Assembly (NCBI GenBank): GCA_051294905.1
Contig: CM119386.1
Location: 3,968,001 to 4,032,000, forward strand
Origin: Botryllus schlosseri
Lineage: Eukaryota
DNA length: 64,000 bases
Direction: 5' to 3'
Every line of letters starts with the position of its first letter. Positions within the stretch are counted from its first letter, which is position 1. The position numbers and the translations under genes were made by a program. The notes under the pieces were generated by a model. It did not search any database. It had not been told where the DNA came from and saw nothing but the letters and a program-made list of their open reading frames with translations. Shown piece after piece: positions 40,550 to 63,654 of the stretch.

Positions 40550-43396
40550 GCATAGATCGTCATTGATTCACAATAATCACTCATCTTGTGTTAAAACGTA
40601 CGAAGTACTGTTTATTGTGACATAACTTAACATGGGAATTGCGAGCATGTGTCGTAATTCAGCTGCGAATTGTCCTAGTTTTTTACGTGCAAATTTTACT
40701 TTTCTTCCGTTTCTGGGCATTTTGACCGAATAAAGCGGTGTCCAGATTATCCAGTGTCCGAAAAAGCGGAGTAGACTGTATTCCAAAGGAATAAATAGCA
40801 GAGCAAGTTCAGGGACAAGATTGATATGGGCCAAAACAGACTTATTTGTGACGGCATTGCGTGCTGTGTGGCTCACATCACCATTTCTTAACCTATATGG
40901 AATATATTGTAGGGTTACCATACGTCCTTTTTTTTACTTTTTTGCCACCCAAACGTCCTCTTTTTTGAGAATTTTGGTTAAAGGGTAAAATTCGAATGAG
41001 ATACAGTAAATCAGCACTGAAGTAACGCTCCGGCGGCTATTACGGAAGCTGAGCCGGAAAGTTGATCCGAAAATTTTGAAAAAATACTATATTGTTAATC
41101 CTAGAACATTCGATATGACTTTTTTGTATATAGGTGATACCCATTATATCACAACACAGCTTAATGTGTCAGGAACTGATTGCTCATTGATTTTTAACGA
41201 CATAGCTTGATACTGCTTCTGTTCCAATGGCTGGTGCAATACACATGCTCAACAAGTTTTCGAATCGTCCAGAATCAAGTATGGAACATCAGAAGAAAAA
41301 TTCTAGCACCTACCTTCAAACCCCAAACAGGTAATATCTAAGGTGAAGTATAAATCCGAATTTGAGTAATCTGAGGAGTAATCTGAGGATTACTCGATTT
41401 CTGATCTATTACGTTACAAATCATTCATTATTCAGGCAGTCGATTCCGAGCTTAATTTCGCTAGTTGGGGATAAGTATAATGTAGCGTAGCTATATAATG
41501 TGTAGGCCTATTCTGCGACTAGGTCGCTACAATCCTGTTCGTGGTATCCTTAGAATAAGTTGCTGAAGGAGACTACATATAGCGAAATCACAGCAAATCC
41601 CTTCAATTGTACAAATATGATCTTTATAAGGGCTATGGTACAACTGCACGCTTATCGTTCCATGTCGTTAGGGTCGTTACGGACTAAAAAGTTTAATTTC
41701 ATCGACATGCGACAAAATATCAACAATTCTCTAAAGAGGTCTAGCTGTTTCATCTTCGAAAAATATCTTTTATAGGTGCTTGATAAATATTTTTCGCGAA
41801 TATCCATTGCGGGCGGACGGTGCACCAAATCTCAGAGATGATAAGCACCCCAAGAGTTTTCGCTAAAACGATTTTTTTGTTATTAACAATAATAATAATA
41901 AATAAACATATGTGCAACTTTCAAATCAGCCAGAATTACATAGCAATCCAATCATTACAGGAGCGTGATGCCTAAAGTACGAAGAACGTTTGGCAAGGAT
42001 CGAGCACCAAAAAGATTTCGTAAAAAAAGGTGGGGATATAGTCAGGAAAGGCTTTTTGTAGCCGAGAAATTTCGGACAAAAGTTCTCAGACCTAGAATTA
42101 TATTAGGACTCCGCGAGAAAAATTAAACGGAAAGCTATAGTTCGGAATTCGATTATACCAGTGTCTCACAAACTTTTTTACACGACGCCCATGGGACGCA
42201 AACCAAGTATAGAACATCGCCCTAACCCCTCCTGTTTGGTTCATTACGTAAACTTTTGGCCTTGATCTAATTCAGGGGCGGCCAACCTTTTCGGCCAAGG
42301 GGCCACATGACATTTGCGAATCTTTGCGCGGGTCACTTGAATGTTGAATGCTGATGACCTTTCTTTAGTCGTCCGATAAGAGCGAACCGGATTACGTAAC
42401 GATGAAAACAAGACTGGGTGGATTGCACAGATGCCGATTGAAAAGTAATCATCGATTGCCTTAATCGGCGATAATTTAATCAGCGAGCAAGGTCACCTAG
42501 TGACTCTGTGGTACAGATACGGATTCGCCTGTGAGTTATCTTATCGCGGATTACTGACGCAAATCGACGCAAATGACGTACGTTAGCAATCAGCTGTTTT
42601 CGGTCGGTGGCGGTATGAACTGTGTCGTCATAAGGGAGAGATGCGATCTTCATAGATGTGTATGTTTAGTTGATGTCAGTGAAGTTGTTGTATGAGGTTT
42701 ATTCGTTGCAGATCTAACTAAACTGTTGCCACTGCATAGTGCTAGGTTATGAACGCCAAGCTTCCCCTTCTACTGTAGAAAATGCGAAGCCAGAATAAAA
42801 ACGTTTCGAGGTTATGATAAAATGTATTGTAGGACTAGACTACCAAAATCATCGTCTTATACCGGTGTAGCTATGCCAGAAACTGTACATATCCTACTGC
42901 AAATTTCGTATGTTGCATGGCATTTATCTAACTACGTTTAATAAGGAATTTCATTTTCCGTTTACACGTTTATTGATGCAGTCGTCGCGATAGCCACTTC
43001 ACCAATGTGAATATTTATAAATTGAGTTCATACAAAACATCTGTGTAGATTCTGCAGAACATACATTAGCATCAGATTTCTCCATATCAATTGGTTCTGA
43101 AGGAGTGTAGAAGTATATTTCAGCCATTGCAAGGATTTAACTGTTGTGCAATGTGGAGATGTTATCCTACAATAAGCATATGCATATTTGCTCAAATGCT
43201 GTGAAAATAGGTATGCATTTATGATACAATTTTGCAATGCAAAGTTAACTGCTGTTACCCAGTTGAGTAATCTTGTAAGCTGACAACCAAGCCTCTAGTC
43301 AGTTTATCAATAGTTTTACAGTGACCAAAAAATTCAATACAACCTGTTTTAATGAAAAGCTACACCAATATAGTCAAATAACAACCGAGAAGAACA

Positions 43397-44437
43397 ATGG
43401 ATCCATACCTCGATGTTCTTGCTACGCTCCGGAGGTTAGAGAGTCTTGTAGAAGAAAGAGTGCCAAGAAGATTGGTAAAAGACAGAGCCAATCCACTGGA
43501 ATGTCTGACTGATGAGAAATTTGTCGATAGGTATCGGCTGTCAAGACAATCCACTGTGGATTTACTGTCCATTATCAAAGATGATTTGACGTATGAAAGT
43601 AGTCGATGTCATGCTATCCCGCCCCACTTCCGGCTGCTTGTCACCCTTCGCTTTTTTGCTGCGGGTCATTTCCAAAGGACTGATGGTGATTTGATACCAA
43701 TGGATAAGAGCAGTGTTTGCAGGATTGTACATCAAGTGTCGAGGGCAATAGCTGGCAAAAGACATGCTTTTATGAAATTCCCTTCAACACCACCGGAAGT
43801 GCGTGCCCAAATGAACGCGTTTTATGAGGAACATCAATTCCCAGTAGTTGGCCTGGTTGATGGTACCCATGTCCGAATTTGCAGTCCTGGCGGTGACAAC
43901 GCTGAATTGTATCGTAATCGAAAAGGCTATTTCTCAATTAATGTACAACTTGCCTGTGATTCCAATATGGAATTCATTCATGTGGTATCAAGATGGGCAG
44001 GAAGTACACATGATAGCAGGGTCCTTGAAAACAGTACTCTTCCCATGGCAATTCAAAAAACTGATGGTGTTCTACTTGGAGACAGTGGCTATCCGTGCTT
44101 GCCATACCTCATGACCCCTATTTTAAATCCATCCACTCTGTCGGAATCAAGATATAATAAGTCCCACATTGCCACCCGTATTAAAATAGAAAGGACTTTC
44201 GGGGTATGGAAACAAAGGTACCGATGTCTAGCAATACCTCTTCGTACCAAGCTGCAAAATTCTTTCACAATTATTGTTGCGACTGTTTGCCTGCATAATT
44301 TTTGTATGAGGCGGAGGGAAATTAATCTGAGCGAATACACCGCGGAGGTTAGCGACACCGATAACGTGACAGCACAACCGAGCACGACTTCAGGCAACAT
44401 GAAGCGGAGAGAGATTGTGCAAAATCACTTTTCTTGA
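43397..44437 (+). CDS. Harbinger/PIF DDE transposase (HARBI1-like, DDE_Tnp_4), 346 aa, uninterrupted
   Basis: LLVTLRFFAAG, HTH-like DKSSVCRIV, GLVDGTH, NRKGYFSINVQ, GSTHDSRV, LLGDSGY, IERTFGVWKQRY, LHNF. The catalytic D/D/E positions appear intact. Confidence 0.95.
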   Translation: MDPYLDVLATLRRLESLVEERVPRRLVKDRANPLECLTDEKFVDRYRLSRQSTVDLLSIIKDDLTYESSRCHAIPPHFRLLVTLRFFAAGHFQRTDGDLIPMDKSSVCRIVHQVSRAIAGKRHAFMKFPSTPPEVRAQMNAFYEEHQFPVVGLVDGTHVRICSPGGDNAELYRNRKGYFSINVQLACDSNMEFIHVVSRWAGSTHDSRVLENSTLPMAIQKTDGVLLGDSGYPCLPYLMTPILNPSTLSESRYNKSHIATRIKIERTFGVWKQRYRCLAIPLRTKLQNSFTIIVATVCLHNFCMRRREINLSEYTAEVSDTDNVTAQPSTTSGNMKRREIVQNHFS

Positions 44438-44779
44438 GTGTCTATATCAATTCATCTATTGTTTGAACATCAATAATCACACATTCAATTCCTGGTCTAT
44501 TACTTTTATTACCAGATCCAGTATGCTTTACTCAGAATTGGACAACTAGAAAATTAGTACAGAATTATAGATATGGTAGGTATTTTGTAATTAAATTAGA
44601 ATGGGGATATCTGAATATGTCAAAATTTGGAAATTGAATCGCTTTAGTATTGGAGGTTTCTACTGTAGCATTTTCAGCAAAACCAGAAATTAGGTTGGAA
44701 TTATATTACCATCATTTCGCACTAACTAGTCTAATTAGACAGCCAATTAACTAGTTGTCCAAGTCTGGTTTTTGTTGTT

Positions 44780-44949
44780 CTATTTCGTTTCGTCGCTGTA
44801 TTTTTTCAATTTTGCTGCGTGCAGTTCTTTTGCCATTTCCAGTTTTTGCTTTTTAATTTCCAGTTTCTCCCGTTTGACATACATCTTCAATTCGAAATAC
44901 TTCATTCTGATATTGTGTTGCTCCTTGGCCATTTCCAGGACACTCATTT
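44780..44949 (-). CDS. Harbinger Myb/SANT-like protein, exon 6 (coiled-coil C-terminus)
   Basis: GTTCAG|AA; EMSVLEMAKEQHNIRMKYFELKMYVKREKLEIKKQKLEMAKELHAAKLKKYSDETK*. Confidence 0.8.
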
Positions 44950-45011
44950 CTGAACACCACATTTTGATCAGCAACATTATGATTAAAATATAATTTTTTC
45001 TCTCAACACAC

Positions 45012-45098
45012 CTGGCTTTTCCAGACTTTGAATTCTGGCCCTCTTTTTTGAGACAATCGGTGTCGATCTGTTTGTTTTCTCTGTTTCCTCTTGTATAT
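45012..45098 (-). CDS. Harbinger Myb/SANT-like protein, exon 5 (87 nt)
   Basis: ATGCAG|AT...CCA G|GTGTGT; phase 1-1; DIQEETEKTNRSTPIVSKKRARIQSLEKP (NLS-like KKRAR); flanked by 60- and 62-nt introns. Confidence 0.7.
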
Positions 45099-45158
45099 CT
45101 GCATGCAGCAATGAATAAACTGTGGGCTGCAATATTGTATGCTAATGCTAACACTTAC

Positions 45159-45245
45159 CGGTCTGGTGTTCCATCGCAAAGTCTTTCAAGGGTACTGAAG
45201 GTAGTGTTACATCGCCATCAACGAAAAGAGCAGCGGTTTCATTTG
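45159..45245 (-). CDS. Harbinger Myb/SANT-like protein, exon 4 (87 nt)
   Basis: CTTTTCTTGCAG|CA...ACC G|GTAAGT; phase 1-1; ANETAALFVDGDVTLPSVPLKDFAMEHQT. Confidence 0.7.
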
Positions 45246-45470
45246 CTGCAAGAAAAGTACGGATAACAACAGTTGTATCCTGATAGAGCATGTTGTTGTC
45301 AGTCAAAACAACCTCGAATCTTCTATTTGAAGTATTCGTGTGAGAGAGTCTTAATTTTAATCCAACCAAAATACATAACACACAGCAGTGATGGTGGTAC
45401 AGAAAATATGCTTGCACAGTATTCGGCTACGTTGGTACCAACATGAATTGAAATTACTACCTATACTTAC

Positions 45471-45557
45471 CATCGCTGTTGTGACATGACGAGCCATCCT
45501 CTGTGTTCACATCATCGTTAATAATGAAGGTGCAGATTGAATCCTGGGAATATCCAT
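45471..45557 (-). CDS. Harbinger Myb/SANT-like protein, exon 3 (87 nt)
   Basis: TTTTTATTCAG|AT...GAT G|GTAAGT; phase 1-1; DGYSQDSICTFIINDDVNTEDGSSCHNSD. Confidence 0.7.
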
Positions 45558-45934
45558 CTGAATAAAAATGCAATGCTTCAGAAGAACAGTAAAATCTATG
45601 AAGGCCTACAAAACTTGTTACTGGACTGCTAATACATGCTTCAGTATGAATCTTTCTCAAATATCTAGAAAATTTTAGTTAGAAATACATTAGAAAAGTT
45701 ACTTTCAAATTTTTCTTTCATGGTTTATCTTATCATCGCGAAACATAGGAAGGACGGAAGACTAAAATCATGAATTGAGTGGAGTTAGAATTATCAGTTT
45801 GGAATGGGATGAATTGAGTTGACTCGGTTCACCGCTTCAATATGCCAGACTGTTACAAATTAAAATTTGATGCAAGTTCCTCAGCCGTTGGTTGTAATAG
45901 TTAGCCTACATATTCAAAAAAATAATGTGCTCAC

Positions 45935-46012
45935 CATTGTTTGGGTAGCTATCCAATACACTATCGTCGTCATACGGATGTTTCAGACTTTCAATTTGAG
46001 ATGGGATAAGTT
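45935..46012 (-). CDS. Harbinger Myb/SANT-like protein, exon 2 (78 nt)
   Basis: CACTTTTCAG|AA...AAT G|GTGAGC; phase 1-1; ELIPSQIESLKHPYDDDSVLDSYPNN. Confidence 0.75.
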
Positions 46013-46337
46013 CTGAAAAGTGATAATAAATATACCAGTTTTATGAAAACAAATGCAGATTAATCAAGAAGCGGTTCACATTCGAGATTCGCTGAGCAGT
46101 GTTCCCCATGTGCCATTTTCGTATAGCTGATGTGCAGCAGACTCTGGATATGGTTAGTTTTTTATGAATACAAAAAGACAATATATGTATGTTTTTCAAG
46201 CTCATCAAAATTCATATATTTGGCTCAAAACGAGCGTCAATATATGTATGAAGCACGCTGCGAGTCACGATAAACACAGATGGAAACAATAAATCAGCTA
46301 ATGCGAATTTTTAAGAATTGCCAGTCAAGTTACCTAC

Positions 46338-46653
46338 CGAAAACCTTTTCCAAGAGGTCGTCAACTGGAGGTGGCGGTGGGCCACCACCAGTTTTGGCCC
46401 GTTCCACGCGTCGTGAGGCATAAATCTTTTTTGCTTTTTGTTTCATATTTTTCCATGCATTCTGGATTTGGCCAGTTGTCCGCGCAGGACCATTATTCAT
46501 GGCTGCATATTTCTTGCTGATTGCATCCCAGGCGACATCTTTTTGTTTTGTTGTTTTGCCATCTGTTTTTTTGTTTTCCACAGTTGCAATATATTCTTCA
46601 ATCAATTCTATTAATCGAAACTTTTCTTGTCTATTGAAATTCTCCGTCCTCAT
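46338..46653 (-). CDS. Harbinger Myb/SANT-like DNA-binding protein, exon 1 (MSANTD/NAIF1-like domain)
   Basis: MRTENFNRQEKFRLIELIEEY...VENKKTD...KDVAWDAISKKY...RTTGQIQNAWKNMKQKAKK...KTGGGP, a typical Myb/SANT-like trihelix domain; donor G|GTAGGT. Confidence 0.92.
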
Positions 46654-46703
46654 ACTCTAATTCCAAAGTATACTACCGATTTTTATGCAGCCTGTAAAAT
46701 GGC

Positions 46704-48038
46704 CAGAGGTGGTCAGTAACGAAGTACTTCTACTTTTTCGAAGTACTCAAGTAGTTTTCCTCTAATTCTGGTACTTACCCAAGTAGATCTGATTTTCGCT
46801 ACTTCTACTTCTACTTCATAATATTTTGTGCTCTACTTACTTACTTTTCGCTATTTTTAGTTTGTCAAGTAGAAGTAGTTCAATCTTCCAATCAGGTAGA
46901 TAGTCTGAGGAATTTCGGGGCTGTTTTCACGGAGTACCACCATTTGATTTCCATAAAAAAGCCAGTAAAGCCAGAATTTCAGTCGCGCAGTGGATACGGC
47001 GTTACCAGTATGATTTCACGAAAGTATCGATGAATATAATTCATGTGGCGGGTTGGCGTGATTCCGTTCACACAGGGATATCCAGAATTATATATCTAGA
47101 TATCCCTGAGTCCACACCACATTGTCGCCCTTCGCGCATATGAAATAATTCATCGCAGTATATATGGTTAATCATAACGTTTGAAACTGATGTTTCGCAA
47201 TCCAGCATTTAATTACTTGTCATATCGTAATCTAGCATGTCCACGGCGCTTCCTAACTTGGAATAGTGGACTCTGACCTTTTTTGTTAGTTTTAGAGCTG
47301 TTTCAGCATACCACCGTTGATACTTTCTGGACTAAAGGCATGGAAAACGTTTACCGCTTTTAGAACTAGTATTTATGTTCTATTTTCAATTCCCAGTATC
47401 ATATACTTTGAGTTATAATCAATATCAGTTCTTTGGTATGGATACCATGCATGTTGAAGTTTGAAAGCAAGTGTAGTAATGCCTGTAATTTCCGGAAATA
47501 AAGCTACACAATATGGGATTTTTACGGCCCACCATATTTTTTATTAACGTTTACTAATCGCGCAAAGTGTTTACACCGTATCCTATACAACTCTTCCGTA
47601 TTGCTCTTCGACTAAACTACGGACCTTATAATATGGGGGATGGCGCCATACCATGCTATTTTTTAAAACGTGCTGTTCGAGAAAACAGGATAAGTATCGC
47701 ATTTCCATATCAATCCTATCATTTTCATCCCATGATGTGGACGAATGCTTATGCTATCAAAAATTGGATACCGGCTGGTATGCATCAATGTGAATATAGC
47801 TCGTCACCTTTCGCATAGCTTAATTTGCACCTTTATACAATCCATGTGAACAAATTAGGATCGTTTTCACAACTACTTACTTACTTAAGTACTTTTAAAG
47901 TCAGTCAATTCTACTTCTACTTCAAGTAGTTTAAGGTTGCTTATGGAAGAAGTACTTTTACTCGTACTTGAGTAGATTTTTTCGTCGGTACTTCTACTTC
48001 TACTTGAGTAGCTTTCTTGGCTACTTTGACCACCTCTG
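46704..48038. mobile_element. hAT MITE (1335 bp, AAGTA/TACTT-rich) inserted in the Harbinger
   Basis: 12-bp TIR CAGAGGTGGTCA; perfect TSD AAAATGGC (46696-46703, 48039-48046). Related left ends at ~8606, ~38133 and ~60518. Confidence 0.9.
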
Positions 48039-49479
48039 AAAATGGCATACCGGTAATCATATCATAACGTACTCTCAGCTGTGGTGGGCCTTATTATATG
48101 CGCAAACAGTTGTAGTAGTGTCAGAGTACAATAATTTCAGCTAATACCGCAACTGCACGCGAGAGCTTCTACTCAACACCATCTCAGTACCAAGCACAGG
48201 TGTCTATAGCCAGCCCAGACAGCAGCCACGCCGCGAAGCACACAGCCGATTAACTTTCTAGACACCTCGTTCGGCGGATAACATTTGACCGATTAAAATT
48301 CACGGATTAGTGGCTAATCGTTATCTGTACCACGGAAGGCAGCCGATTACTGACGTTTAATCGACGATTACCACTTAATCGACATCTGTGCAATCCACCC
48401 TTAGCCTTCGCATCAAAATCGATTAGAAATATGTAATGAAAAGTCAGTGTGCATAGTGCAGTCATGATCTAATCGCCCCAAGCGCGAATTTTTTTTTAAA
48501 GTTAATGAATGAAATCGGCCGATCGTAATATTATTGGCTTAAATTGCGGGTCGCCGCTGTATGCCGCTGTGTTCACTTGGAAAGGACAGGATTGTTCGGC
48601 ACCAAGGCATATAAATTTTCAAGATTTCGGCTTAGATGCGTCTATCATTTTGTGCAAAGGTTTCATCGCCGACAATCTTTCTGCAAGTGCAGACGCGAAG
48701 TCGGATATTGGACGACACGTTGTCTCATAATTTCGAGTATTGTCAGACTCAATTCGGAAAATTTTCAGGAGGGGGTACTAAAGCAAGAAATTGAGTGACA
48801 ATAAATCGCGCAAAGCACTAAGTAAAATATGAAGTTAAATAAATCTACAACGAAATATTCTACGTTATTGTCGGATACGAAGATCTACGAAAAATGTGGC
48901 GGGCCCCTGGTTACGCAAATGCGTCGGAACTGATATTTAAGTCATCAAGAACCAAAATTTCGTGGTCAAGCTAATAAAATTTTTGCTTGGCCGTGCAAAT
49001 TCACAATAAATTACTTGCGTAATTTATTATTTGATATTATAGCAAATTTCGGGAATTATCTCGCGGGCCACTCAGAATCTGATCGGGAGCTCCATCTGGC
49101 CCGCGGGCCACGGGTTGGCCGCCTCTGATCTAATTCATTGCTCGATATACGTTATGTATACGCTATGCCAAAGTCGGATCTTGTACGGATTCTAAGGACA
49201 GTCGAATCAGTAAAAACAATCGTACAAGGCAATTTCTCTTCCATGTAATAGCACTTCGCTTTGGAGCGTTGTACATGCGTTTGAATGTGTGCTCATAACT
49301 AGCGCTCAATAAGTGTTAGTGAATAATTATAGCATTTGGTATTTGATTGATAGATTGTTTGCCTAGAAAACTTAATGTAGCATAACAATGAGCATAAGCG
49401 AGAGCGTTAGTGACGATTTGCGATTGAATGCATCTTGTACGGCCGCGAAAGCTGTGATCACATTTTCATAAATCAGACT

Positions 49480-54603: not shown

Positions 54604-55477
54604 CAGGGGCGGGCAACTTCTCCAGTCGGCGGGCCGGATATATGAAAATTAAGCACTTATTGGCGGGCCGGATCGATGAATCGACACATTATTCGCCCAT
54701 TTATCCACATATACAAGGTGTAAATCGTATTTAATGAATGTATGTTAACGACAGCAATGTCACTTCAAAGCCATTTCTCGCCCATAATGATGAAGACAAT
54801 GTGGGTTCGAGAACAGCATTGTCATACAGGCGCCGCCATGTCTGCTTCTCTCTGATCAATCAACACACGGTGCAATGCAATCACTAATTAAGATTTCAAG
54901 GCGTTCGATAAGCCCGGTACCCCAAATTTACCAAGATATCAATTCATTAGGGCTGAGTAGATGACGAGATAGTGTCGTTGTTCCACTATGTGGCCTATTT
55001 ATCTCGATATTGAATCCATGCGGACCGCGGCTTCTACGACATTTGAAAAGTGGCCCGTGACCCGTTTTGAGTAGGCGACCCCTGGCATAAGCGGTGTCTT
55101 ACAAAAGCCTAGAAGTGTGCCGTGCTACAAGTCGGCAGCTACGGAATCAAAAGTAAGAAATATCGGCCTGGTGTAAATGACCATTGTAGTCGACAAACGC
55201 CATGATTATCACAAACGATATTTGGGTTGAGTACATCGTAAATGCCGATAATGCAAGTCTTCCCGCTTCAACGAACTTACGCGTAAGCTCCACTCTCGCA
55301 CGCTGCGCAGTGCGCATACATGTATATAATAACAATCAGTCACCAAAATTTGACGTAGTAAGCAAGTAGCGGGGAATCTCGGCAGATTGTATCCGCGGGC
55401 CACATTATCATATAAGACGGAAAACTGTCCGCGGGCCGGACAAAATCACTTTGCGGGCCGTATGTTGCCCGCCCCTG
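54604..55477. mobile_element. hAT (Buster-type) MITE, 874 bp
   Basis: 14-bp TIR CAGGGGCGGGCAAC; perfect TSD ACCTACAA (54596-54603, 55478-55485). Confidence 0.92.
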
Positions 55478-62902: not shown

Positions 62903-63265
62903 CTCTAAGAGAAACATTACAGCCGAAACTTGGTGGCTTGGGAATGGTTATTCAAGCGTGATGTTTCATACAATATGGCGTTTATGGCTTTGAAGTATTG
63001 AATTGGGTTGTAATAAAACCAGTCAAAGGCCATCTCCGTGACATTCAATGACATCAGTTTTAACAATTCTACCAGGTACTGTGCGATGGCGTTCCCAATA
63101 CGCATATATTTCAATTAACAGAGGAGCAAATATTGCAATGAAGTTTGGGACACGAAGACAGGAAAGTACAGCAACATTCTGTGTTAACACTTGCCACAGT
63201 ATTACTTGCAATGTTCTTAAGGTGCAAGCTGCGACAGGAATGTCACGAGACTTCATCACAATCAC

Positions 63266-63387
63266 CTGGAAAGTAGTAACTATTAGAGCAATCGGTCTTG
63301 GAACTTTTACTCTTGCAGCCCGGAGAGCGTAATATGTGTACATCATGGAATGCACGACAAAATTCATCACCATGAAGACTGGCCCAC
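63266..63387 (-). CDS. ELOVL: ELOVL3/6-like elongase, internal exon (upstream exons outside the window)
   Basis: ATTTCAG|GT GGG CCA; GPVFMVMNFVVHSMMYTYYALRAARVKVPRPIALIVTTFQ|GTGAT; contains the GNS1/SUR4 NxxVHxxMYxYY motif. Confidence 0.95.
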
Positions 63388-63654
63388 CTGAAATGTTACA
63401 TATTCGCATTACCATTCTCTTGCAGTCATACATTCCACTGTGCTCGCAGTAATGAATAATTAATATGTGACGACACCTCATATTTCATCCTGAATCGTTT
63501 CATTCTTCGGGCATGCATTACCACACCATAATTGGGCAATGGGCACAAGTCGCATGGTATGGTAAGTTAGTTGTCAAAAGCAAATTACAGTACCATCATT
63601 ACCATGAGCAGAAATCGCAACCGAATACTAAAAAATATTGCTAACCTTTAAATA

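What the first reader, a model, noticed from the sequence alone, without database searches (positions are those of the whole stretch)
42273..49127. Three-level nest: hAT MITE encloses an intact-looking Harbinger transposon, which holds a second hAT MITE
Seen: the outer hAT TIRs (14/15) have a perfect TSD ATCTAATT 6.85 kb apart. Removing the Harbinger (42416-48400) leaves ~870 bp, matching the size of the free MITE at 54604-55477 with similar TIRs. The Harbinger has 24-bp TIRs, an uninterrupted DDE ORF and a spliceable partner gene. Established: hAT transposases need only the ends in cis, and Harbinger transposition needs both the transposase and the Myb/SANT protein. Inference: the outer ends could move the whole cassette, so a two-gene Harbinger may hitch-hike on hAT mobility. 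The missing Harbinger TSD (ACT vs TTA) leaves the order of events open.
Basis: partly seen in the sequence, partly recalled or inferred. Interest (0 to 1): 0.7.

Follow-up and report, generated by a model that had tools for sequence, protein, structure and literature searches.

The report
Ordinary three-level nested transposon insertion
An old 870-base hAT-type jumping gene was hit by a young two-gene Harbinger transposon, which was then hit by a second hAT-type element; the nest is real but occurs only once in the genome, so it looks like an ordinary pile-up, not a new way for a Harbinger to travel.

Summary
The outer element (42273-49127) has 14/15 ends and a perfect 8-bp duplication. It encloses a 5985-bp PIF/Harbinger (42416-48400) with an open 346-aa DDE transposase gene and a Myb/SANT gene. 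That Harbinger holds a 1335-bp hAT-like element (46704-48038) with its own perfect 8-bp duplication.

The order of events is not open:
- 37 relatives of the outer family run straight through the Harbinger site, and that family is old (about 12% from its consensus).
- The Harbinger is 97-99% identical to four other copies. None of them lies in this MITE and none carries the inner element.
- The inner element is 98% identical to its nearest relative.

The missing Harbinger duplication is explained. The family duplicates TTA, the MITE consensus has a TTA at this site, and 3-7 bp including the left copy are gone.

Both composite junctions are unique in the 495-Mb assembly. Nothing shows that the composite ever moved as a unit. 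A single cut-and-paste move cannot be strictly excluded.

Unchecked earlier notes of this scan describe similar nests elsewhere in this genome, which they call a sea squirt.

The parts
42265..42272 (.). left copy of the 8-bp target duplication (ATCTAATT) of the outer element
42273..42415 (+). left arm (143 bp) of the outer 870-bp hAT-like non-autonomous element, including the 15-nt terminal inverted repeat
   Evidence: about 93% identical to the family consensus and colinear with 37 relatives
42416..48400 (+). PIF/Harbinger transposon (5985 bp; 4650 bp without the inner element); terminal inverted repeats at 42416-42457 and 48359-48400
43397..44437 (+). transposase gene, single open 346-aa frame, DDE_Tnp_4; the DGTH, GDSGY and IERTFG motifs that hold the D, D, E residues start at residues 155, 228 and 264
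44780..46653 (-). Myb/SANT partner gene. Five-exon model: 46653-46338, 46012-45935, 45557-45471, 45245-45159, 44949-44780. All introns are GT-AG and phase 1; the product is 245 aa. It is convergent with the transposase gene.
   Evidence: Exon 1, exon 2 and the last exon are conserved at protein level (34-63%, mostly 46% or more) in Harbinger lineages whose transposase is 66-70% identical. No RNA evidence.
45342..45426 (.). about 85-bp piece of a separate high-copy repeat inside intron 3 of the Myb gene; shared by all young copies and absent from the older lineage
46696..46703 (.). left copy of the 8-bp duplication (AAAATGGC) of the inner element, 43-50 bp upstream of the Myb start codon
46704..48038 (+). 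inner 1335-bp hAT-like (Tol2-like ends) non-autonomous element with no coding remnant
48039..48046 (.). right copy of the inner element's 8-bp duplication
48401..48403 (.). TTA, the surviving right copy of the Harbinger's 3-bp target duplication; the left copy is missing
48401..49127 (+). right arm (727 bp) of the outer element
49128..49135 (.). right copy of the outer 8-bp duplication

Best explanation
This is three successive, independent insertions at one place.

1. Long ago a copy of an abundant 870-bp hAT-like non-autonomous element inserted here and duplicated ATCTAATT.

2. Recently a copy of a young, probably still active, PIF/Harbinger lineage inserted into a TTA in the left part of that element. 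The family's normal 3-bp duplication survives only on the right. Between 3 and 7 bp of the MITE, most likely 7 (TATA plus the left TTA), are missing on the left. The few bases just right of the TTA also differ from the family consensus. So the insertion was imprecise or the junction was damaged afterwards.

3. A 1335-bp element of a second hAT-like family with Tol2-like ends, which was active until recently, then inserted 43 bp upstream of the Harbinger's Myb gene and duplicated AAAATGGC. This happened either here or in the donor copy before it moved.

Shown: the anatomy, the order of events, the copy census and the uniqueness of the junctions.

Inferred: the outer shell is a passive wreck and not a vehicle. 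This Harbinger copy keeps both reading frames, but the upstream region of its Myb gene is split, so it may depend on sister copies for that protein.
For: Outer element came first:
- 37 relatives are continuous across the Harbinger site.
- The window copy is 0.12 substitutions per site from their consensus, its best partner is 83% identical, and the closest pair in the sample is 95.6%.

Harbinger is young:
- Copies at C6 and C13 are 99% identical, the C17 copy is 97% and a C17 end fragment is 98.9%.
- Their flanks do not match the outer element.

Family target is TTA:
- C13 has TTA on both sides, C6 has TGA/TTA, and the C17 copies have TTA on the one end present.
- The MITE consensus reads ...AAGACT TATA TTA C TACGC..., while the window reads ...AAGACT | Harbinger | TTA GCCTT CGC....

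Inner element came last:
- It is absent from all sister Harbingers. Their sequence closes over one copy of the 8-mer.
- 19 relatives are 90-98% identical, and 14 of the 19 have perfect, mutually different 8-bp duplications.

Composite is unique:
- Only the window itself matches across either 80-bp junction.
- No second near-identical copy of either arm exists. The next best are 89% and 82%.

Coding state:
- The transposase frame is open here, in C13 and in C17, and frameshifted in C6.
- Myb exon 1 is open here, in C6 and in C13.
- A five-exon GT-AG model reads through.
Against: - The outer copy has a perfect 8/8 duplication, while 8 relatives have at most 7/8. A younger insertion date would predict this. 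At 12% divergence, however, 8/8 is expected by chance about 13% of the time.
- A cut-and-paste move leaves no second copy, so uniqueness alone cannot exclude one move of the composite.
- Genome searches score only the best 40-150 candidates, so the copy census is a lower bound.
- The hAT assignment of both shells rests on duplication length and end sequences. No transposase was linked to them.
Confidence: 0.87

Rival explanations
1. The composite is a working vehicle. After the Harbinger entered the MITE, a hAT transposase recognised the outer ends and moved the whole 6.9-kb cassette to this site by cut and paste, so the Harbinger hitch-hiked.
For: - The outer ends are 14/15, and the left arm is about 93% identical to the family consensus.
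- The 8-bp duplication is perfect while relatives have 6-7/8.
- The genome holds many hAT transposase frames, some open over 600-934 aa.
- hAT elements can carry more than 10 kb (Tol2, PMC1635535).
- Cut and paste need not leave a second copy.
Against: - There is no second copy of either junction.
- The closest relative of the outer copy is 83% identical, and the youngest sampled pair of the family is 95.6%. That is far older than the Harbinger's divergence of 1% or less from its sisters.
- The perfect duplication has about a 13% chance probability.
- No autonomous partner with these ends was identified.
Confidence: 0.04
2. The Harbinger did not enter by a normal transposase-made staggered cut. 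An excised copy was captured at a chromosome break, or a one-ended or aborted transposition event was repaired. This gave no duplication and altered bases on both sides.
For: - The left TTA is absent, and the bases just right of the TTA (GCCTT against the consensus CTA) also differ. The rest of the arms is about 93% identical to the consensus in the left arm and about 88% overall.
- PIF/Harbinger excision removes the element together with one copy of the TTA (PMC2836001). An excised molecule could therefore bring the single TTA with it.
Against: - Both Harbinger ends are complete to the last base and identical to the sisters', which is unusual for end-joining capture.
- The MITE consensus has a TTA exactly where the right flank starts, as a normal insertion predicts.
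- The C6 sister also has a mutated duplication (TGA/TTA), which shows that simple decay happens.
Confidence: 0.1
3. The nest is an assembly artefact in which repeat copies were joined wrongly.
For: All three components are repeats, and reads could not be checked.
Against: - The two outer arms fit one family member exactly (870 bp, continuous register) and carry the same 8-mer on both sides.
- The inner element is bracketed by the 8-mer that is single in the sister Harbingers.
- Three coincident exact junction pairs are not what misassembly gives.
Confidence: 0.02

Closest known systems
PIF/Harbinger superfamily (Harbinger3_DR of zebrafish; Ping/Pong of rice)
   Same: It has a DDE_Tnp_4 transposase plus a separate Myb/SANT protein gene, short inverted ends and a TTA target duplication in the family. 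Both proteins are needed for movement (PMC2836001).
   Different: This copy lacks the left duplication. Its Myb gene has four phase-1 introns and is convergent with an intronless transposase gene. Its Myb upstream region is split by another element.
hAT superfamily non-autonomous elements (Ds of maize; Tol2-derived elements)
   Same: Both shells have 8-bp duplications and ends beginning CAG. The inner family starts with the same 8 nt as both Tol2 ends (primers in PMC4818426) and has AAGTA repeated 15 times in each terminal 200 bp. That recalls the repetitive subterminal region that a paper title in that reference list reports as essential for Tol2.
   Different: No transposase remnant and no identified autonomous partner. 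At 870 and 1335 bp they are large for MITEs.
Nested transposon insertions and oversized non-autonomous copies swollen by later insertions
   Same: A young element sits inside an older one, with the order readable from divergence and from empty relatives. Unchecked earlier notes of this scan describe the same in this genome (s1-268384, s1-240532, s1-249688).
   Different: Nothing of substance. The only particular point is that the guest is a two-gene Harbinger that still looks coding-competent.

Membership tests
PIF/Harbinger | DDE transposase of the DDE_Tnp_4 / PIF type | tested here: met
   PF13359 at 2.9e-34 covering the full model (1-158 of 158); the three motifs that hold D, D, E are present.
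PIF/Harbinger | second, separate gene for a Myb/SANT-like DNA-binding protein | tested here: met
   PF13873 at 9.3e-16 in exon 1; five-exon open model; exons conserved in related lineages.
PIF/Harbinger | 3-bp target duplication TTA/TAA | tested here: inconclusive
   Met in the family (C13 TTA/TTA, C6 TGA/TTA, C17 TTA). In this copy only the right TTA is present.
PIF/Harbinger | terminal inverted repeats shared by family members | tested here: met
   (42 nt, 86%); dozens of loci match the terminal 40 nt at 88-98%.
hAT (outer element) | 8-bp target duplication in independent copies | tested here: met
   Window copy 8/8. Five relatives have 6-7/8 at different sites, and three others were misregistered.
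hAT (outer element) | autonomous partner with the same ends encoding a hAT transposase | tested here: inconclusive
   hAT dimerisation domains are abundant and the 15-nt end occurs 392 times. No listed pair was adjacent. Only 100 of the 392 places were listed, and no more genome DNA could be fetched.
hAT (inner element) | 8-bp target duplication in independent copies | tested here: met
   14 of 19 relatives have perfect, mutually different 8-mers.
hAT (inner element) | hAT-type ends and subterminal repeats | tested here: met
   The first 8 nt equal both Tol2 ends (PMC4818426). AAGTA occurs 7.5 times per 100 bp in the ends against 0.29 in the background.
hAT (inner element) | autonomous partner encoding a hAT transposase | not tested
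   The internal ORFs have no Pfam match.
Composite transposon that moves as a unit | two or more loci with identical internal junctions and different outer duplications | tested here: not met
   only the window's own locus spans either junction; sister Harbingers have unrelated flanks.

The most novel reading that the evidence does not exclude
The 6.9-kb cassette is still a competent hAT substrate and reached this site as a unit. A complete two-gene Harbinger would then have been carried by the transposase of another superfamily, giving it a second, independent route of spread.
Probability: 0.04. Interest if true: 0.5.

Novelty: new member of a known kind. Interest (0 to 1): 0.2.

Why it matters
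As a nest it is routine. Abundant MITEs are frequent landing sites, and the order of events here is the usual one, young inside old.

Its use is practical:
- It gives clean, dated examples of three families in this genome.
- It shows that one Harbinger lineage has several 97-99% identical copies with open reading frames, so it is a candidate for current activity.
- It shows that a Tol2-like non-autonomous family moved even more recently.

If the composite were shown to move, it would be a natural case of one DNA transposon superfamily ferrying an autonomous member of another. Nothing here points that way.

Tried and rejected
There is no test of insertion polymorphism, of expression or of splicing.

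2. Full sister copies. The C6 and C13 copies were judged from their ends and from protein and DNA match tables.

3. The look-up of encoding contigs with the transposase found no record.

4. Linking the outer ends to an autonomous hAT. I compared the places of the 15-nt end (only 100 of 392 listed) with the hAT domain places. No adjacent pair was seen, so the result is inconclusive.

5. Pfam on the eight ORFs of the inner element found nothing.

6. Two automatic splice-chain enumerations gave no model or unconvincing ones. The final model came from reading the open segments, from seeing that part of one apparent ORF is a foreign 85-bp repeat, and from locating consensus sites. The exons were searched one by one by reference. 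The joined product was built only inside a local script to check the frame and was not sent to any search tool.

7. Same-family status of the free element at 54604 was rejected, because only the ends match.

8. Ectopic recombination between two Harbingers as the cause of the missing duplication was rejected. Both flanks belong to one continuous MITE copy with one outer duplication.

9. The large protein searches were not used. Pfam had already settled both proteins.
Full report
**Observation**

- The outer ends at 42273 and 49127 are inverted copies of one 15-mer, matching at 14 of 15 bases. They are flanked by ATCTAATT at 42265-42272 and 49128-49135.
- Inside, 42416-48400 is bounded by inverted repeats that match at 23/24 and extend to 42 nt at 86%.
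- This inner unit carries a single open 346-aa frame on the plus strand, 43397-44437, which matches the PIF/Harbinger transposase domain DDE_Tnp_4 at 2.9e-34 over the full model.
- On the minus strand, a 107-aa open first exon starting at 46653 matches the Myb/SANT family PF13873 at 9.3e-16.
- Inside the Harbinger, 46704-48038 (1335 bp) has 12-nt inverted ends and is flanked by AAAATGGC on both sides.

**The outer shell**

Joining the two arms gives exactly 870 bp. This joined sequence is a full-length member of a very abundant family in the window's own 495-Mb assembly:
- The first look found 1714 and 3915 candidates for the two arms.
- The exact 15-nt end occurs 392 times, against 0 for the reversed control.
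- Thirty-seven distinct relatives align straight across the point where the Harbinger sits.
- Relatives at other loci carry degenerate 8-bp duplications at different sites, 6-7 of 8.

The family is old:
- The window copy is 0.12 substitutions per site from the consensus of its relatives, and they are 0.08-0.20 from it.
- Its best partner is 83% identical, the median pair is 79% and the closest sampled pair is 95.6%.

Its interior does not align. It is a different family that may share a transposase type.

**The Harbinger**

The assembly holds four other copies of the same young lineage:
- C13:16137337-16141986 and C6:4649721-4654369, both 99% identical and both full length at about 4650 bp.
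- C17:2417010-2420760, 97% identical, with a 214-bp internal deletion and truncated inside Myb exon 1.
- An end fragment at C17:1784 kb, 98.9% identical.

None of their flanks matches the outer element. None carries the 1335-bp inner element. In each of them the sequence closes over a single copy of the 8-mer that is duplicated in the window.

Coding state of the copies:
- The transposase frame is open in the window, C13 and C17 copies and is frameshifted in C6.
- Myb exon 1 is open in the window, C6 and C13.

For the Myb gene I arrived at a five-exon model: 46653-46338, 46012-45935, 45557-45471, 45245-45159 and 44949-44780 on the minus strand.
- Its four GT-AG introns of 209-377 bp are all in phase 1.
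- It reads through to a 245-aa product with an N-terminal Myb/SANT domain, an acidic middle and a coiled-coil-like tail.

Exon 1, exon 2 and the last exon are each matched at protein level. Identity is 34-63%, mostly 46% or more. The matches lie in the same order and convergent orientation, next to Harbinger transposase genes that are only 66-70% identical to this one. This supports those exons as coding.

The exons were searched one at a time by reference. The joined product was made only in a local script to check the frame and was not sent to any search.

So "intact-looking" holds for the reading frames, with one reservation. The inner element sits 43-50 bp upstream of the Myb start codon and splits the roughly 410 bp between that gene and the right end of the Harbinger. 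That is where its promoter would be expected. Whether this copy still expresses the Myb protein is unknown, though sister copies could supply it.

**The missing duplication**

The lineage duplicates TTA:
- C13 has TTA on both sides.
- C6 has TGA and TTA.
- The two C17 copies have TTA on the one end that is present.

This agrees with the 3-bp TTA duplication described for the superfamily (PMC2836001).

The consensus of the 37 MITE relatives at the site reads AAGACT, TATA, TTA, C, TACGC. The window reads AAGACT, then the Harbinger, then TTA, GCCTT, CGC. The right-hand TTA therefore sits where the MITE has its own TTA. The left arm stops 7 bases short (TATA plus the left TTA copy). If this copy had already lost TATA, it stops 3 bases short.

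The Harbinger ends themselves are complete and identical to the sisters'.

The simplest reading is a normal insertion into TTA with a small deletion at, or after, the event. Capture of an excised copy at a break is a minor alternative. Recombination between two Harbingers is excluded, because both flanks belong to one continuous MITE copy with one outer duplication.

**The inner element**

Nineteen relatives, 90-98% identical, were examined. Fourteen have perfect, mutually different 8-bp duplications, and the ends are conserved. The nearest relative is 98.3% identical. Because the 99% sisters of the Harbinger lack the element, it is the latest event. A cut-and-paste donor leaves no trace, so it may have entered the Harbinger before that copy moved here.

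Its first 8 bases equal those of both Tol2 ends as given in primer sequences in PMC4818426. The pentamer AAGTA occurs 15 times in each terminal 200 bp, against 0.29 per 100 bp in the window. Its internal ORFs match no Pfam family.

**Does the composite move?**

Both 80-bp junction probes are matched across the junction only by the window's own locus. Every other hit covers only the Harbinger half. No second near-identical copy of either arm exists; the next best are 89% and 82%.

Two cautions apply:
- A single cut-and-paste move leaves no second copy.
- The outer duplication is perfect where relatives have 6-7 of 8. At 12% divergence, though, 8 of 8 is expected about one time in eight.

Against a recent move, the outer family shows no pair younger than about 4% in the sample, whereas the Harbinger has been here for at most about 1% divergence.

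In its favour, only general facts can be cited. Size is no barrier for hAT elements, since Tol2 carries more than 10 kb (PMC1635535). The genome has many open hAT transposase frames.

**Comparison and verdict**

This is a nested insertion of known kinds: a PIF/Harbinger inside a hAT-like non-autonomous element, with a second hAT-like element inside the Harbinger. Unchecked earlier notes of this scan report similar nests and an oversized hAT copy elsewhere in the same genome, which they call a sea squirt or tunicate. I did not verify the organism.

The finding is real and well described, and its mechanistic speculation is unsupported. The interest is low. The most useful by-product is a catalogue of a young Harbinger lineage with open frames and of a recently mobile Tol2-like family.

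Noticed in passing
G000:C3:30450196-30453632 and at least 40 other loci (relative to window 43503-44332): An older lineage (72-82% DNA identity) of the same Harbinger family lacks 830 bp, which is 277 codons of the transposase gene, with an exact junction. It keeps the Myb-gene region. Most copies share an in-frame stop in Myb exon 1, so it is an amplified non-autonomous deletion derivative.
   Followed up: partly
window 45342-45426: An approximately 85-bp piece is 95-98% identical to many unrelated loci (1287 first-look candidates). It lies in intron 3 of the Myb gene of all young copies and is absent from the older lineage. It is a fourth, tiny repeat in the nest, and it created a misleading open frame.
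   Followed up: partly
window 46704-46903 and 47839-48038: The inner element has Tol2-like ends: the same first 8 bases as both Tol2 ends and 15 AAGTA motifs per terminal 200 bp.
   Followed up: partly
right ends of Harbinger family copies genome-wide (one search list): In 23 of 39 hits the alignment runs at least one base past the TTA (TTAG). In 6 hits it runs 8-10 bases past the end of the element, resembling the window's TTAGCCTT. This suggests a one-sided extended target preference or short flank carry-over. The left flanks of the sisters show no mirror pattern.
   Followed up: no
G000:C1:32.44-32.70 Mb: Nine copies of the outer family with exact 15-nt ends lie 16-47 kb apart in one orientation, so this MITE sits inside a tandem segmental array.
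   Followed up: no
G000, e.g. C1:12776575, C9:3299281, C9:4097178, C2:38415784: At least 150 hAT dimerisation-domain matches were found, many in open frames of 600-934 aa. Four loci carry the same 934-aa frame, which makes them candidates for active autonomous hAT elements.
   Followed up: no
window 54604-55477: A separate 874-bp element has a perfect 8-bp duplication (ACCTACAA) and ends one base different from the outer family, but an unrelated interior.
   Followed up: partly
window 63023-63481 (-): An open frame matches the fatty-acid elongase family ELO (PF01151, 8.4e-12). It is probably an exon of a host gene.
   Followed up: no
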